The position numbers were made by a program, and so were the translations under genes. DNA of 64,000 nucleotides, from the NCBI RefSeq assembly GCF_963853765.1, contig NC_088856.1, positions 43,896,001 to 43,960,000 of the forward strand, given 5' to 3'. This DNA is from Magallana gigas (lineage: Eukaryota). The notes beneath the pieces are model-generated. The model was not told where the DNA came from. It made no database searches and worked only from the letters and a program-made list of their open reading frames with translations. Positions 53,201 to 58,404 of the stretch are shown piece by piece (the stretch's first letter is position 1; each line of letters begins with the position of its first letter).

Positions 53201-55175
53201 ATTTCCATGCAGACAGTTCTGTGGATCTCCATGGTATAAGTAAATCTAGCATACACAGTTTTTGGGGATTGTAAGTGATGTGTCAATATCCTTAGTTAAA
53301 AGTTTAAGATATATTAGATAACCTTAGAATTTAGCGGCAATTACTTCTTCCATGTTTGATTTTACGAGAAGATAACTTTTTTTTTTGGTTTCCAAGCGTT
53401 ATAAGAGTAACCCACGGAACACATGTTAGAGATACGTGCACTTTTTTAAAAGGAAAATATAGTTGTTCATTGGAAATTTATCATTCAATAAAGACAATGG
53501 CTGTCCATGATGCCAAATTAAATATTACCAATATGGTAGCAAAATGGTCTAGATCAACTCATGATTCATTTTTGTGGATTACAGTTCCATACTTTACCAA
53601 ACGGAGAATTACCGAGTAATTGACTATTTACTATAATGTTGATAATTGCAATATACGTATCATTAGGAAGATGTTTGGTGTTGTAAACACTATTTTGCAT
53701 ACTGCCTGCAACATTTTTTTTAAAGTAAGATATCAACCACCAATAGATAGTGGATGTGCGAGGCTGAAACCATATACACTGTATACTCTTAGCAACTCAT
53801 ATGACAGAGACATCGGTTGCCCCAATTTCAAAAGCATTTTGATTGCCCTTTTGCCAGTCACTTGAGTATAGTGTAATAAATCCTCTCTAAAAAGCAATAT
53901 ACACTGTACCTAAGTGCCGTGAATTGCAAACATGAAATGTTATTCTGCTACGGTTCAGGGTTCAATCTTACGTGTATATGTAGTAAGTAAGCTACCAGCA
54001 TTTACAAGGTTTCCGCGCGAAGAAGTTGAAATAACATTTATATAATTTTTTAACACTCCTCTTGGCCTGCAATATGTTCATGTACATAGTGAATGACATT
54101 CTATAGCAGAGAGTCGTCAGTGTAGAATAATATAAAACTAAATTACAGATATGAAACATACTTGTAAAGAAAGATACATAAATCTTTATGATCATAATTA
54201 TTTTGATAGATAACATCTTTTGTGGAAGTACTTTATACGTGCTTTAAGGAGGCTGGTTGGTCTACAAAATAACCATAAGATCTGCCTTAAACTTTCAGAT
54301 TTATACATGTATATTCTGCCATAACTGACATTTTGTAATTAAATATATTCAAGCTTTCAAACTGGACCATTTTCCTGAGTTCTTATACGGACGTCTTTAT
54401 CTCAACGAAATTAAACTAGTTTTAAGATGGCCAAGACCATCGAGCCTTCTCAGTTCTAGGCAGTTTCAGTCTCTTCAAAAGAAAGACAACCCTTAATGAA
54501 AGAAAGTCTTGGAAACTCTGAAAACTGCGGTGCATAAAATCTTAAACAAATTTTAAGTACGGTTTCTGTAAAAATTTTATAAAATCTGTCGTGTTAGTGT
54601 ATTTTTCTCTTCTTTTTATCTCTTGAATTAAAAAACAGATCCAAAAAAAAAATCATAATTTAAATTAGTAATTAAAGAGATTGTCCTCTCGCGTCAAGAA
54701 ATTCTATAAATGAAAATCCATAATTTAAGGAATATGTATACATGTTTAGAGAAGTTCAACTTTTCGTAAGAAGAGAAATTATGCCGAAATTCGGCTGCCT
54801 GTTTTTATGAGATGGGAAGATTTTAGTCTCTAATCGCCCTTTTGAAATTTTAACTTAAGATATTCTTCTAATAATAATTGCTATAAAATATTTGTTTCTT
54901 ACCTTTACAAAATCCAAATCAGAAAAGAAATCAATTTGTTGATTTGAACTGTTTATATTTGCTTTAGTTTCGCAGAATGGAGTCAAGTCTCAATTGTCAA
55001 GTCGTAGAAAAATTCCTGTTGAAAATGTTGTTAGTTTAACGATCTTGTAATAAATGTTTACCCAATTTACTTGACAATAAATGTGTATTGTCTTTTACCA
55101 TGGCAAACAGTTGTACGAAATTCGATAGACATTCATGTAAGGGTTTTTTTTGGATCCTGAAATATCCAAAAGAAG

Positions 55176-55176
<1 letters not shown>

Positions 55177-55243
<67 letters not shown>

Positions 55244-55248
55244 GCACA
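55177..55248. repeat. Compound (CA)n(CG)n alternating purine-pyrimidine tract
   Basis: About 25 CA units followed directly by about 8 CG units. Confidence 0.95.
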
Positions 55249-55493
55249 GCAGCGATGCAATACCCCTTTCGGAACAAGTTGCACGAGGTCAAAAAATGAT
55301 ATCTGAATATCTTGAATTGAAACAAAATGCCAATACATTTATATGCAAATGGTCTCAGTTGTTCAATAGTGTAATAAAGATTGTAACGTGTAAATGTATC
55401 TTTATTATTTTGTATACCTGACAGTAGAAAACATAATACTAGTATAACTTGACATAGCAGAACTTTGATATAATATAACTGCCCTTATGTAAC

Positions 55494-55498
<5 letters not shown>

Positions 55499-55582
<84 letters not shown>
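55499..55582. repeat. Interrupted (TC)n microsatellite
   Basis: Directly visible; interrupted by tgagac. Confidence 0.95.
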
Positions 55583-56232
55583 GCTCTCTCGATCGATAGC
55601 TCAACTCATCTGAAAAATAATCAGCATGATTTTATTAAATGTTGTAGTCAATCAGGACATAATGTTTAGTTGTGAGTATATTATTCTACCAATTCTGATG
55701 TCTTTAATCGCTGTTAAAAAAATCTAGTTTGTTGCTCGTTACGCCATGCACTTGTCATTTGCATGCTTGCAGGAGTCTCTTATTTAAGGAGGCTTGGTGG
55801 TTAACAAATTCGCCATCAGATCTTGCTAAGATTTTTTGTAAAGAAAAATGTTTAGCTTTGAAAATTGAATATATTTAGTTAAATAGTTATACAGATATAT
55901 TTTTTTTTAAGGGAATTAATATAGTATAATAAAGTAAACAACAATGGTAAACGCCATCTAACCCTTTAAATTGCAATATTCACTCGTTCAATTTAAGTGC
56001 CAACAAAAAAAACCTTTTGAAAAACATGTATTGATCAGAATGCACCTAGGGAAATCGGTTTAATTAGGAAGCAGACTTTGCGGAGATTCTAATGGCATCA
56101 AATATTTTAATGCTTATGTAACGTGCAAGGGGGTCACTGCCTGTGATCCCCCGCGGGCCCGTACCCGAGATAGAATCGGATAGCCCTGATTGCTGCCAAT
56201 ACTTACAAGTGCAGACTTTAATCACCACTCCT

Positions 56233-56646
56233 GCACATATATAGGGACTCAACGTTACGCAGGCAGGGATGACCGCACACTTACGCAACTGAACAGATAC
56301 CAACGTTAACGCAAGCAGGGATGACCGCACACTTGCGCCAACAACGCAACCTAACGAAAGCAGGGAGTGCCGCATACTTGCGCTAGAAAGGCCAGAACAC
56401 CAGCAGGGATGACCACACACTAGTGCTCCGCCATAACCACCACCAGTACTAGCAGGGATGACCGCACACTTGTATCAATGCGATACAGGGCAGGGATGAC
56501 CGCACACTCTGTATCGTAGGTTAAATAACACGAAGATTAGAAGGAGCAGGGATGTCCACACCCTCAATCTATCCGTACCTGTTCAAGTTAAACCCCAAAA
56601 AGTCGTTCCTTCAATCACGCAATTGACACTGTCCCTATATATGTGC
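56233..56646. repeat. Repeat-spacer array: 7 x 19-bp GCAGGGATGACCGCACACT with unique 19-37 bp spacers, enclosed by a perfect 16-bp inverted repeat
   Basis: Repeats at 56263, 56315, 56360, 56403, 56452, 56490 and 56546; IR gcacatatatagggac (56233-56248) / gtccctatatatgtgc (56631-56646); no cas-like ORF in the window. Confidence 0.9.
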
Positions 56647-57944
56647 CGGCCTAAAATAATTTGAAGTATCTAAAAACGGGAAATCAAAAATAAACAAAGT
56701 AACCCAACCTTATCCAAAACTACATATGCACAACACCTTAGTTAAATTGAATATTTATTATTGTATAAAAAATAATCATTACACTGATTGGTAATTATTG
56801 GTAACATTATTTAAATAATCAAAAATCAATTAATCAAAGGGGAATAACTCTTGCTAAAAAAATACATCAATAAGCTGCCCGCTTCACTTATATACATTAC
56901 CTTCATTTAAATCATTCAACGATTTAAATTGCTTTGTCAAAACATGATCTTTAAATACTCGATATCAAAGTAAACATGTTTAAGTAAAAGAATTTTTAAT
57001 TCGTATATATTCATAGCAGGACATATGTGTTATATTACACACAAAATAGCATTTTATTTTTCTATTCCCTGCGTATCTCCAAGCAATAGTAATTACTCTT
57101 AAGGAATCAAAGGATTAAGGTATCAATTTATAAAGAAAATATTTTACCATGTCAAAAATAAATTCCAATAAGTTTCAGATACCTGGTTTTGAAAAAAAAA
57201 ACGAAGCCTTGACATTGCATATACAAGGAACAGCCATTTGAGTTTTCAAACCAACCTTATACAATACTAGATAAATCAAGCACCTTGTCGTATTGCACCA
57301 TCGAATTATCTGTCAATGATGTGGCTCTATGATGTAAATAAAGTTTATAACTATTTTTGTAATATGTCAATGCCTGTTATATTATACAAGTATGATATTT
57401 TCGACACTCATATTCAGCTTACTAAATACGCCCCCATTAGGTTCTTTTTTTTTCAACAGTTTTGTCTGTCTTTGTGAAAATCTCTTTTAAAGAAAAAAAC
57501 AACAACAAAAACCACAATTATTAGTTGTATTCGACGAGGAACATTGTTAAAACTTTTAAGTGGTAGTAGTAGTAGTGAAGAAGAACATTTTCTGCTAATC
57601 TGATCAAAAAGCGATTGCTTACAAAAGTAATAAAGATATACAAGATACAATTGTATACGTATGTAAATACATTTATAAATGTCACATTGATAAACGACAA
57701 GCCTTGATCTACGACAAAATCATAATTGAGATCACGTCAGACGTGAATTAGTTTTTCGTTGTTTAGTCGTTTAGTCTTTAGCTGGACAGACTGGTTTGTT
57801 AAGAAACGAAATAATGGGGAAAAGGGAACATATGCTTAAAGCAATTGTCCTCGGTCACACTGAAAGTCAATCTATATGTTAAAATGATAAGTTAATGGAA
57901 ATCGCCTCTGCCGACAAGTTTGGCTAATTGATCTTTTCTTCTAG

Positions 57945-58404
57945 TTTTTTAGCCGGGCTCTGCTGAAAGCAGAGTCCTGGCTATAGGCAGGCAAATCGCC
58001 AATGTTACTGTAAATAGCACAAGTAAACAAAAAACCAAACAGCGTCAAGGTAAAGCTTCCGCTATACCAAATAGTTACACAAAGAGCCACGTTTTGTAAA
58101 AAGTGTTGGCATTTTGTTTCTTTTTTTTTTAAATTTCGAATGAATTGTCTATCTGTTTGAGTTTTCTTATTAACAATGTGTTTTTAACACATTACTATGC
58201 ATTTTGGACACATACAATGCACATGAATTTCCATGAACTACTTTGCTGCGCGATGAAGAAATGGGGATTGAATATATAATGCTTGTTGCAAAATTCAAGG
58301 CAGCAACTGTTGAACTTTTTAACTTCTACTAGACAGACATATTTTTTGTTTATAGCCGCTTACAAAATTTGGTCGCTCTCTGATGCTTTGCCGACATTAA
58401 AAGC

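What the first reader, a model, noticed from the sequence alone, without database searches (positions are those of the whole stretch)
56233..56646. CRISPR-like repeat-spacer array in an animal genome whose repeats sit in loops of spacer-encoded hairpins
Seen: seven copies of GCAGGGATGACCGCACACT (four exact; R3, R4 and R7 variant) separated by six different spacers of 33, 26, 24, 30, 19 and 37 bp, so this is not an ordinary tandem repeat. The spacer ends flanking a repeat tend to be complementary, closing a stem around the constant CAGGGATGACCGCACA loop. Examples: R2 cgcaag/cttgcg (perfect), R6 cgatacaggg/ctctgtatcg (one G-U), R3 cgaaag/cttgcg, R4 caccag/ctagtg and R5 tactag/cttgta (one mismatch each); R1 and R7 are weaker. 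Stem sequence changes between units while pairing is roughly kept. A perfect 16-bp IR encloses the whole array. Inference: a multi-hairpin RNA or ssDNA presenting seven copies of one binding loop. It could be a protein decoy or scaffold (architecturally like bacterial CsrB, whose hairpin loops carry CAGGA(U/C/A)G), or a recognition module of a rolling-circle (Helitron/HINE) element. It is not called CRISPR because there are no cas genes and spacer lengths are irregular.
Basis: partly seen in the sequence, partly recalled or inferred. Interest (0 to 1): 0.8.

Follow-up and report, generated by a model that had tools for sequence, protein, structure and literature searches.

The report
Seven-hairpin RNA array in Gypsy LTR
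The "CRISPR-like" array is the middle of a solo long terminal repeat left by a Ty3/Gypsy retrotransposon of the Pacific oyster; on the element's sense RNA it folds into seven near-identical hairpins that look selected, probably as a multi-site protein-binding platform.

Summary
In detail: seven copies of a 19–20 nt motif, six unequal "spacers" and a 19-nt enclosing inverted repeat. It is not a stand-alone or CRISPR-like element.

The array is the central 420 bp of a 770-bp solo LTR (window 56117–56886, TG…CA, 4-bp target duplication CTTA). The LTR belongs to a Ty3/Gypsy retrotransposon family with hundreds of copies in this genome. Full elements have two LTRs, a tRNA-Leu(AAG) primer-binding site, a polypurine tract and a gag-PR-RT-RNaseH-IN polyprotein.

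All 30 copies examined carry the same seven units and the same spacers in the same order.

The element's sense strand is the window's minus strand. There the array folds into seven 36–40 nt hairpins inside one long closing stem.
- Energy in a young copy is −175 kcal/mol (z −6.5), against −127 (z −3.7) for the other strand.
- Stems differ between units but stay complementary (1 of 5040 permutations does as well).
- Variants shared between copies always keep pairing through G·U (8 of 8). Private mutations mostly break it (52 of 78).
- A sister family (76% Pol identity) has four hairpins with a related apical motif.

Best reading: a selected cis-acting RNA domain offering seven binding sites. The partner (Gag or a host factor) and the U3/R position are unresolved. 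The window's own copy is a decayed relic.

The parts
56117..56886 (-). Solo LTR (770 bp) of a Ty3/Gypsy retrotransposon. On the sense (minus) strand it reads 5'-TGAAGCGGGCAG...TTGCACGTTACA-3'.
   Evidence: Homology to 29 other genomic copies starts and stops here. Same-strand pairs of this unit, 98.5-99.7% identical, flank gag-pol elsewhere. Termini were read.
56113..56116 (.). Target-site duplication CTTA (left copy).
   Evidence: Full elements of the family also have 4-bp TSDs: ATAT, TTAG, GTAC.
56887..56890 (.). Target-site duplication CTTA (right copy).
56631..56649 (-). 5' arm (in sense RNA) of the long closing stem. It contains TATATA.
   Evidence: Inverted repeat I1. It pairs with 56230-56248 in the single-sequence and alignment folds. 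It is nearly invariant in 30 copies.
56537..56572 (-).
   Evidence: -10.1 kcal/mol in the window copy.
56481..56516 (-). Hairpin U2 (R6), lower stem CGAUACAG / CUGUAUCG.
   Evidence: Two shared polymorphisms in its 3' arm are G.U-compatible.
56443..56478 (-). Hairpin U3 (R5). Its stem is broken by private mutations in the window copy.
   Evidence: One search gives -5.4 kcal/mol here, against -14.9 in a young copy.
56394..56429 (-). Hairpin U4 (R4), lower stem GGAGCACUA / UGGUGUUCU with G.U pairs.
   Evidence: The antisense version does not fold (z +0.8).
56351..56386 (-). Hairpin U5 (R3), with variant apex GG-CACU-CC.
56306..56341 (-). Hairpin U6 (R2).
56254..56289 (-). Hairpin U7 (R1), lower stem GUUGCGUA / UGCGUAAC.
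56230..56248 (-). 3' arm (in sense RNA) of the closing stem. It contains TATATA.
56217..56222 (-). ATTAAA, a candidate poly(A) signal 7 nt downstream of the closing stem.
   Evidence: Read. Function is inferred only. Sense RNA depth stays high to about 40 nt beyond it.

Best explanation
Shown: window 56117-56886 is an inverted solo LTR of a Ty3/Gypsy LTR retrotransposon family of the Pacific oyster, left by LTR-LTR recombination and flanked by the 4-bp target duplication CTTA. The seven repeats occupy its central 420 bp. On the element's sense strand (the window's minus strand) each 18-nt repeat, GUGUGCGGUCAUCCCUGC, forms the apex of a 36-40 nt hairpin. The flanking 'spacer' ends form a 9-11 bp lower stem that differs in sequence from unit to unit. 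A 17-19 bp stem made by the enclosing inverted repeat closes all seven hairpins into one ~420-nt domain. Poly(A)+ RNA reads cover the domain, mostly in the orientation expected for sense RNA. Variation among copies shows purifying selection for sense-strand pairing. Inferred: the array lies upstream of the likely poly(A) region, so it sits in the 3'-terminal U3/R part of every full-length element RNA, and also in the 5' leader if the upstream TATA is the promoter. It most likely acts in cis as a multivalent platform that binds seven copies of one protein. My first choice for the partner is the element's own Gag, through its CCHC zinc knuckle, to select or condense the genomic RNA for packaging. 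My second choice is a host factor for nuclear export or stability, as with retroviral CTE, RxRE and RcRE elements. The window's own copy is an old, partly decayed relic with no coding partner beside it and is probably inert.
For: LTR identity:
- Homology to other copies is bounded at 56117-56886.
- There are at least 426 candidate copies, and the exact 18-mer occurs 517 times against 0 for the reversed control.
- Same-strand pairs are 98.5-99.7% identical and flank a 1697-aa ORF with zf-CCHC, aspartyl protease, RVT_1, RNase H and integrase domains in that order.
- The 18-nt PBS is complementary to the 3' end plus CCA of this genome's tRNA-Leu(AAG).
- A polypurine tract is present, and TSDs are 4 bp.

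Structure:
- In a copy from a young element the sense fold is exactly seven hairpins plus the closing stem, at -175.2 kcal/mol and z -6.49. The antisense fold is -127.2 kcal/mol and z -3.73.
- Single units fold at -9.9 to -18.6 kcal/mol on the sense strand (z to -4.6), against -3.7 to -11.5 on the antisense strand (z +0.8 to -2.3).
- The alignment fold of 30 copies keeps the same 149 pairs.

Selection:
- 98.6% of cells are paired on the sense strand, against 80.4% on the antisense strand.
- Variants shared by 3 or more copies in stems keep pairing 8 to 0. Singletons keep it 26 times and break it 52 times (Fisher p = 3.4e-4). On the antisense strand the same shared variants give 2 kept and 6 broken.
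- Paired columns are 3.5 times less variable than unpaired ones.
- Unit-level covariation: a unit's own flanks give 8.57 of 9 pairs, swapped flanks give 5.38, and only 1 of 5040 permutations reaches the observed total.

Conservation beyond the family: a sister family (76% RT-IN identity) has four hairpins with loop GUGUUGG(C/U)AU on four different stems at the same LTR position.

Transcription: reads from poly(A) libraries lie mainly with the first mate on the minus strand, which in most stranded libraries means sense RNA. Depth is 40-210 across the array.

Gag carries CYYCRKPGHIRKDC. From recalled knowledge, retroviral NC knuckles prefer exposed G/U-rich motifs.
Against: - No protein binding has been tested, and none can be tested with these tools.
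- The transcription start and poly(A) site were not resolved. Most RNA reads are only 90-95% identical to the reference, and many come from an abundant variant subfamily. Almost none continue into gag (depth 1-3). So expression of full-length element RNA in these samples is not shown.
- Within-family divergence is low. Only 2 pairs show double-sided compensation, and the RNAalifold covariation term is -0.2 kcal/mol. The selection argument therefore rests on G.U-compatible variants and on between-unit covariation.
- More distant families of the clade have repeated LTR motifs without convincing hairpin covariation, so the architecture is not demonstrably clade-wide.
- The position upstream of a TATA-like box and ATTAAA is also where U3 enhancer repeats sit.
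- The strand assignment of the reads assumes a standard dUTP-type library.
Confidence: 0.6

Rival explanations
1. The array is a DNA-level U3 enhancer. The seven repeats are binding sites for a host transcription factor that drives the LTR promoter, and the flank complementarity is incidental.
For: The array lies between an AT-rich 5' LTR part and a TATATA / ATTAAA region. Other families of the clade have family-specific repeated motifs at the same LTR position, some without hairpins, for example GAAGCGAC repeats in L040. From recalled knowledge, repeated U3 or leader motifs act as enhancers or insulators in Tnt1, Tto1, MLV and Drosophila gypsy.
Against: A DNA site array does not predict covarying flanks (1 of 5040 permutations). 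It does not predict strand-specific G.U compatibility of shared variants (8/0 sense against 2/6 antisense). It does not predict a conserved 17-19 bp stem closing the whole domain, or a z-score of -6.5 on one strand only. The two roles are not mutually exclusive.
Confidence: 0.18
2. The array has a structural RNA role in replication or 3'-end formation rather than protein recruitment. It would be a long structured R region that aids strand transfer, as TAR does, or a fold that sets the spacing of poly(A) signals, as the HTLV RxRE does.
For: The closing stem brings the two ends of a 420-nt segment together, 7 nt from ATTAAA. A TATATA lies in the 5' arm, so the array could lie in R. A variant subfamily shares the LTR up to about 60 nt before its end and then differs. 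That is the pattern expected from recombination at R during strand transfer, though this is inference.
Against: Such roles do not require seven copies of one conserved apical sequence. ATTAAA is already at a normal position relative to the region where read depth falls. The R boundaries are unknown.
Confidence: 0.1
3. The hairpins are precursors of small RNAs, a miRNA-like cluster in an LTR as in bovine leukaemia virus and foamy viruses.
For: The array is a tandem set of hairpins in an LTR that is transcribed in poly(A)+ RNA.
Against: The hairpins are 36-40 nt with 15-18 interrupted pairs, shorter than canonical pre-miRNAs. Conservation is concentrated in the apex, not in an arm. There is no Rfam match. 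Small-RNA data were not examined.
Confidence: 0.06
4. The array is a neutral minisatellite-like duplication inside the LTR with no function, and the hairpins are a by-product of duplicating an imperfect palindrome.
For: U2/U3 and U5/U6 have similar stems, so units arose by duplication. Some copies and RNA reads lack one to four units (joints).
Against: Stems differ between unit groups with both sides changed (AUAC/GUAU, GCGC/GCGU, GCAC/GUGU). Shared variants never break pairs, whereas private ones mostly do. A sister family keeps the architecture with other stems.
Confidence: 0.04
5. One reading: a CRISPR-like array, a stand-alone TIR element, or a Helitron/HINE recognition module.
For: Only the superficial repeat-spacer layout and the enclosing inverted repeat.
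Against: The spacers are the same in all 30 copies. Homology extends beyond the inverted repeat. TG..CA ends, a 4-bp TSD, a PBS, a PPT and gag-pol define an LTR retrotransposon.
Confidence: 0.01

Closest known systems
Retroviral cis-acting RNA 'responsive/transport' elements in or next to the 3' LTR (HTLV/BLV RxRE, HERV-K RcRE, MMTV RmRE, MPMV CTE, IAP RTE) - recalled knowledge
   Same: Each is a structured domain of a few hundred nucleotides in the 3'-terminal part of the genomic RNA, overlapping U3/R. It is closed by a long stem and carries several stem-loops with repeated recognition motifs that recruit a protein multivalently.
   Different: Those elements have heterogeneous stem-loops, whereas this one has seven near-identical hairpins. 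No accessory ORF (Rex/Rec/Rem-like) exists in this element, which has a single 1697-aa ORF. No sequence or Rfam similarity was found. Binding and export function are untested.
Retroviral/retrotransposon packaging signals bound by Gag-NC zinc knuckles (HIV-1 SL2/SL3, MLV UCUG motifs) - recalled knowledge
   Same: They present G/U-rich motifs on hairpins. They offer several sites per RNA. The element encodes a Gag with a CCHC knuckle. The motif changes between families, as expected for a co-evolving, element-encoded partner.
   Different: Known packaging signals lie in the 5' leader, not in the LTR body, and are not arrays of identical units. No binding data exist here.
Bacterial CsrB/RsmZ sponge RNAs
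   Same: The architecture is the same: many hairpins, each presenting the same short motif, for multivalent protein binding.
   Different: This is a different domain of life, motif and context. It is part of a retrotransposon LTR, not a free-standing regulatory RNA. No Rfam hit was found. It is an analogy of design, not membership.
Repeated U3/leader motifs of LTR elements acting on DNA (Tnt1 BII boxes, MLV 75-bp repeats, Su(Hw) sites of Drosophila gypsy) - recalled knowledge
   Same: They consist of several copies of a short motif with unequal spacers inside or next to an LTR of a retroelement.
   Different: Those act as double-stranded DNA sites and show no flank complementarity. Here the flanks covary and the constraint is strand-specific.
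Mollusc Ty3/Gypsy families (Thomas-Bulle et al. 2018, PMC6238403)
   Same: The element is a Ty3/Gypsy with the gag-PR-RT-RH-IN order, abundant in a bivalve genome.
   Different: I could not assign the family to one of their clades, because no reference sequences were at hand. In my term search of that paper (clade names, primer binding, tRNA) I saw no account of LTR-internal structure.

Membership tests
LTR retrotransposon, Ty3/Gypsy (Metaviridae) | Two long direct terminal repeats flank an internal region, and solo LTRs also occur. | tested here: met
   Five same-strand pairs are 98.5-99.7% identical, 770-787 bp long, and span 3.5-6.9 kb. The window copy has no partner within 64 kb.
LTR retrotransposon, Ty3/Gypsy (Metaviridae) | TG...CA termini and a short target-site duplication. 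| tested here: met
   The sense LTR reads TGAAGC...GTTACA. The window TSD is CTTA/CTTA. Full elements have ATAT, TTAG and GTAC.
LTR retrotransposon, Ty3/Gypsy (Metaviridae) | A primer-binding site complementary to a tRNA 3' end lies just after the 5' LTR, and a polypurine tract lies before the 3' LTR. | tested here: met
   TGGTGGCAGCGGTGGGAT lies 7 nt after the LTR. Its complement is the 3' end (plus CCA) of tRNA-Leu(AAG) genes of this genome. GAGGTGGGGGTAA abuts the 3' LTR.
LTR retrotransposon, Ty3/Gypsy (Metaviridae) | A polyprotein with the order gag(CCHC)-PR-RT-RNaseH-IN. | tested here: met
   Pfam hits along the 1697-aa ORF: zf-CCHC 407-422, Asp_protease 479-567, RVT_1 803-963, RT_RNaseH 1026-1153, Integrase_H2C2 and rve 1274-1444.
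CRISPR array | Spacers differ between copies or strains and are of near-uniform length, with cas genes nearby. | tested here: not met
   The same six spacers occur in the same order in 30 genomic copies. Spacer lengths are 19-37 bp. The sequence is part of an animal retrotransposon.
TIR element / MITE | The inverted repeats are the element's termini, copy homology stops there, and a TSD flanks them. | tested here: not met
   Homology continues 113 bp and 237 bp beyond the two arms in all copies. No duplication flanks the arms.
Helitron / HINE | No TSD, TC...CTRR ends with a 3' hairpin, and rolling-circle Rep/Hel partners. | tested here: not met
   The ends are TG..CA with a 4-bp TSD. The autonomous partner encodes RT and integrase.
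Known RNA families (Rfam 15), including CsrB/RsmZ, miRNA and retroviral elements | A covariance-model match. | tested here: not met
   No match at E <= 1 in window 55000-58000 on either strand.
Retroviral-type cis-acting protein-binding RNA domain (RxRE/RcRE/CTE/psi-like) | A stable, conserved, strand-specific multi-stem-loop fold in the genomic RNA. | tested here: met
   All evidence is in silico and comparative.
Retroviral-type cis-acting protein-binding RNA domain (RxRE/RcRE/CTE/psi-like) | Specific binding of Gag or an export or stability factor, and a replication phenotype when deleted. | not testable with these tools
   No RNA-protein tool was available. The complex predictor takes proteins only.
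pre-miRNA cluster | Hairpins of about 55 nt or more with stems of about 22 bp, and discrete small RNAs. | tested here: not met
   The hairpins are 36-40 nt with 15-18 interrupted pairs. Small RNAs were not examined.

The most novel reading that the evidence does not exclude
The array is a natural multivalent 'hairpin cassette', comparable in design to the engineered MS2 arrays. Seven copies of a family-specific recognition hairpin in the LTR would be read by the element's own Gag zinc knuckle, or by a dedicated host factor. The number and apical sequence of the hairpins would evolve quickly between sister Gypsy families (7 units with GUGUGCGGUCAUCC here, 4 units with GUGUUGGCAUCC in the 76% family). 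That would give each family a private packaging or export code and limit cross-mobilisation.
Probability: 0.35. Interest if true: 0.6.

Novelty: new variant of a known kind. Interest (0 to 1): 0.4.

Why it matters
It removes a false lead, because there is no CRISPR-like system in this animal genome. It also identifies the carrier precisely.

What remains is modestly interesting for retroelement biology. Cis-acting RNA signals of invertebrate Ty3/Gypsy elements are almost unknown. Here a compact and easily testable design shows comparative signs of selection on the sense RNA: seven near-identical hairpins on covarying stems, closed by one long stem.

If the partner is Gag, this would be a clear packaging signal for a metazoan Gypsy element and an example of family-specific signal turnover. 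If the partner is a host factor, it would be an invertebrate counterpart of CTE/RxRE-type elements.

With hundreds of copies (517 exact motifs) scattered through oyster genes and intergenic DNA, the hairpins could also add protein-binding sites to host transcripts.

Tried and rejected
1. CRISPR-like, MITE and Helitron readings were rejected.
2. Rfam scan of 55000-58000 on both strands found nothing.
3. RNA-end mapping. The single read-laying run, with three poly(A) raw-read runs and one contig run on a 5' LTR plus flanks, reported no places where many molecules begin or end, and no poly(A) tail was among the loose ends it listed. Reads come mostly from divergent copies and from a variant subfamily, so U3/R/U5 borders stay open.
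4. The dominant 'loose end' after the array is not one expressed locus. It is a repeat with at least 209 copies, a subfamily whose LTR differs after sense position 720.
5. Bipartite-PBS idea (Ty3-like). The apical motif shows no better duplex with tRNA-Leu(AAG) or with the U5-leader-gag start than shuffled motifs do.
6. Cross-species test. The protein search found no relative closer than about 54% identity (Pinctada, Mytilus), so no orthologous LTRs could be fetched.
7. More distant families of the clade (57-67% Pol identity, 13 LTRs). None carries the motif. Some have other repeated motifs. L045 has three inverted-repeat units, but their stems share a core, so they show no covariation. The second element in the window has only weak GGGUAAUUC hairpins.
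9. Two PBS-pattern loci (L050, L051) held no tRNA gene. A longer pattern was needed to reach the tRNA genes.
10. Earlier findings of this scan returned nothing, either near the place or by words.
11. I did not pass a long dot-bracket string to the count of structure pairs. Pair statistics were computed with fold_alignment and in scripts instead.

Full report
OBSERVATION

The array is real. Seven copies of the motif lie between window 56262 and 56564. Start-to-start spacings are 52, 45, 43, 49, 38 and 56 bp, which gives spacers of 33, 26, 24, 30, 19 and 37 bp. No shuffle of the window yields a single match to the 19-mer. Tandem Repeats Finder does not see a tandem repeat there. A 19-nt, 95% complementary inverted repeat (56230-56248 / 56631-56649) encloses the array.

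WHAT CARRIES IT

The array is not a unit of its own. The genome has at least 426 candidate copies at 90-94% identity. The genome is 564 Mb, and the window is C4:43896001-43960000. One protein hit labelled Magallana gigas lies on a contig of exactly the length of this assembly's C9, and RNA runs labelled 'oyster metagenome' hold the sequence.

Copy-to-copy homology runs from 56117 to 56886, well beyond the inverted repeat. This 770-bp unit starts with TG, ends with CA, and is flanked by CTTA on both sides.

Elsewhere the unit occurs in same-strand pairs that are 98.5-99.7% identical and 2.7-6.1 kb apart. Between the pairs lies an ORF of up to 1697 aa. It has a CCHC knuckle, aspartyl protease, reverse transcriptase, RNase H and integrase, in the Ty3/Gypsy order.

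Seven nucleotides after the 5' LTR lies TGGTGGCAGCGGTGGGAT. This is the exact complement of the 3' end plus CCA of this genome's tRNA-Leu(AAG) genes. A polypurine tract abuts the 3' LTR, and full elements have 4-bp target duplications.

The window therefore holds a solo LTR of a Ty3/Gypsy family. The ORF lies on the strand opposite to the window's plus strand. The element's sense strand is therefore the window's minus strand, where the repeat reads GUGUGCGGUCAUCCCUGC.

NOT CRISPR-LIKE

All 30 copies aligned have the same seven units and the same six spacers in the same order, with 96% mean column identity. RNA reads and some copies lack one to four units (joints skipping 54-237 nt). That is unit loss, not spacer acquisition.

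THE FOLD

In a copy from a young element (its own LTR pair is 98.98% identical), the sense strand folds into exactly seven hairpins inside a long closing stem. The energy is -175.2 kcal/mol with z -6.49. The antisense strand gives -127.2 kcal/mol with z -3.73 and a disordered fold.

The window's copy is weaker, at -163 kcal/mol with z -3.6. Private mutations have opened several stems, and U3 falls from -14.9 to -5.4 kcal/mol.

Taken singly, the sense units all adopt one shape. A 9-11 bp lower stem is made from the 'spacer' ends. Above it the conserved repeat pairs with itself: three pairs including two G.U, a bulged U, one G-C, a bulged C, then GG/CC closing a UCAU tetraloop. Energies are -9.9 to -18.6 kcal/mol, with z down to -4.6. 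The antisense units give -3.7 to -11.5 kcal/mol, with z between +0.8 and -2.3.

IS THE FOLD SELECTED?

Between units:
- In the young copy, six of seven hairpins have 9 of 9 flank positions paired, yet the stems differ (for example CGAUACAGA/UUUGUAUCG, GGAGCACUA/UGGUGUUCU, GUUGCGUAG/CUGCGUAAC).
- A unit's own flanks give 8.57 pairs, and flanks swapped between units give 5.38.
- Only the true assignment, out of 5040 permutations, reaches the observed total.

Between copies:
- The alignment fold keeps 149 pairs. 98.6% of cells are paired on the sense strand and 80.4% on the antisense strand.
- The eight stem variants shared by three or more copies arose in lineages that went on transposing. All eight keep pairing through G.U (UA/UG, GC/GU, UG/CG).
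- Of 78 private changes, which are post-insertion decay, 52 break a pair (Fisher p = 3.4e-4).
- Read on the antisense strand, six of the same eight shared variants would be A.C mismatches.
- Paired columns are 3.5 times less variable than unpaired ones.

Double-sided compensation within the family is rare (2 pairs), because the copies are only about 4% apart. This evidence is good but not overwhelming.

BEYOND THE FAMILY

The genome holds a clade of related Gypsy families with 57-76% RT-IN identity. They share the LTR end CACGTTACA and the tRNA-Leu PBS.
- The 76% family has four hairpins at the same LTR position. The copy examined has 100% identical LTRs. The hairpins carry a visibly related apical motif, GUGUUGG(C/U)AU, on four different stems of 7, 6, 5 and 3+4 bp.
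- Families at 67% identity or below lack the motif. Some have other repeated LTR motifs, but I found no convincing covariation there.
- No closer relative exists in the protein database, so a cross-species test was not possible.

EXPRESSION AND POSITION

Three poly(A) RNA-seq runs cover the array at depth 40-210. Most reads have the first mate on the minus strand, which in most stranded libraries means sense RNA.

Two thirds of the reads are only 90-95% identical to the reference. Many come from a variant subfamily whose LTR differs after sense position 720 and which has at least 209 copies. Depth in gag is 1-3. Full-length element RNA is therefore not demonstrated in these samples, and the call reported no places where many molecules begin or end.

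On the sense strand, each arm of the closing stem contains TATATA, and ATTAAA follows the 3' arm by 7 nt. Depth stays high for about 40 nt beyond ATTAAA and then falls.

As Benachenhou et al. stress (PMC3601003), U3/R/U5 borders cannot be set without RNA ends. If the poly(A) site is where depth falls, the whole domain is in the 3'-terminal U3/R part of every full-length RNA, whichever TATA is used. If the first TATA is used, the hairpins are also in the 5' leader.

MECHANISM

Shown: the array forms a strand-specific, conserved, covarying seven-hairpin domain that occurs in sense poly(A)+ RNA.

Inferred: seven copies of one conserved apex on interchangeable stems is the design of a multivalent binding platform. 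I favour the element's own Gag for three reasons.
- It has a CCHC knuckle.
- The apex is G/U-rich, the kind of motif retroviral NC proteins prefer (recalled knowledge).
- The motif changes between sister families, as expected for a co-evolving, element-encoded partner rather than a fixed host factor.

A host export or stability factor, as with CTE, RxRE and RcRE elements that also sit in U3/R, is the second choice.

I tested and found no special complementarity of the apex to the primer tRNA or to the leader.

The main rival is a DNA-level U3 enhancer. It is not excluded and could coexist with an RNA role, but it does not explain the stem covariation or the strand asymmetry. The miRNA-like, purely structural and neutral readings are less likely, for the reasons given under rivals.

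THE WINDOW'S COPY

The window's copy is an inverted solo LTR, about 6% diverged in the array from young copies, with three or four weakened hairpins. It is most likely an inert relic. Its value is as a pointer to the family.

VERDICT

The feature is a new variant of a known kind, a cis-acting structured RNA domain of an LTR retroelement. Interest is moderate.

The alignment tool printed its own consensus line, which I did not use.

Noticed in passing
window 7236-14975 (+): A second, more distant Gypsy element of the same clade. Its LTRs are 7236-8182 and 14032-14975 (97.6% identical). The LTR ends ...CCGTTACA, with the same tRNA-Leu PBS at 8182-8199. Its ORFs are split (8635-9798, 9723-10748, 10669-12465). 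RT-RNaseH is 45% identical and Gag 27% identical to the family studied. Its LTR has only weak small hairpins with a GGGUAAUUC apex.
   Followed up: partly
L052 and L053 (G000:C1:10040719-10043748, C1:10989214-10992243); at least 209 genomic sites: A variant subfamily shares LTR sense positions 1-720, including the seven hairpins (79-88% identity), and then continues with GTTCCAAGGGGGAAAAATGG... instead of the last ~60 nt. It is the main source of the poly(A) RNA reads on the array. The breakpoint may mark an R-region recombination.
   Followed up: partly
L032:1533-1803 (joints): RNA reads join across 54-237 nt inside the array, so some expressed copies lack one to four hairpin units and the unit number varies within the family.
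   Followed up: no
G000:C1:47616638 / 47621937 / 47627237, and C1:50468655 / 50473865 / 50479075 / 50484285: Hairpin-motif hits recur with a 5.3-kb period, and PBS-pattern hits recur with a 5,210-bp period. These may be tandem arrays of LTR elements sharing LTRs.
   Followed up: no
G000:C4:43839799-43841784 (about 56 kb upstream of the window): A copy of the 76%-identity sister family, the one with four GUGUUGGCAU hairpins, lies close to the window on the same chromosome.
   Followed up: no
window 56600-56620 (alignment A1 columns 33-50): A short segment between the 5' arm of the closing stem and the first small hairpins is hypervariable, with indels in nearly every copy, in contrast to the conserved stems around it.
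   Followed up: no
window 55179-55590: Microsatellites (CA)25, (CG)8 and (TC)46 lie about 0.5-0.9 kb from the solo LTR.
   Followed up: no
window 5181-5931, 6464-6686 and 12363-12462: A self-comparison shows a ~750-bp imperfect palindrome (69%) at 5181-5931, a 98.5% tandem duplication with an 86-bp offset at 6464-6686, and a 100-bp palindrome at 12363-12462 inside the second element.
   Followed up: no
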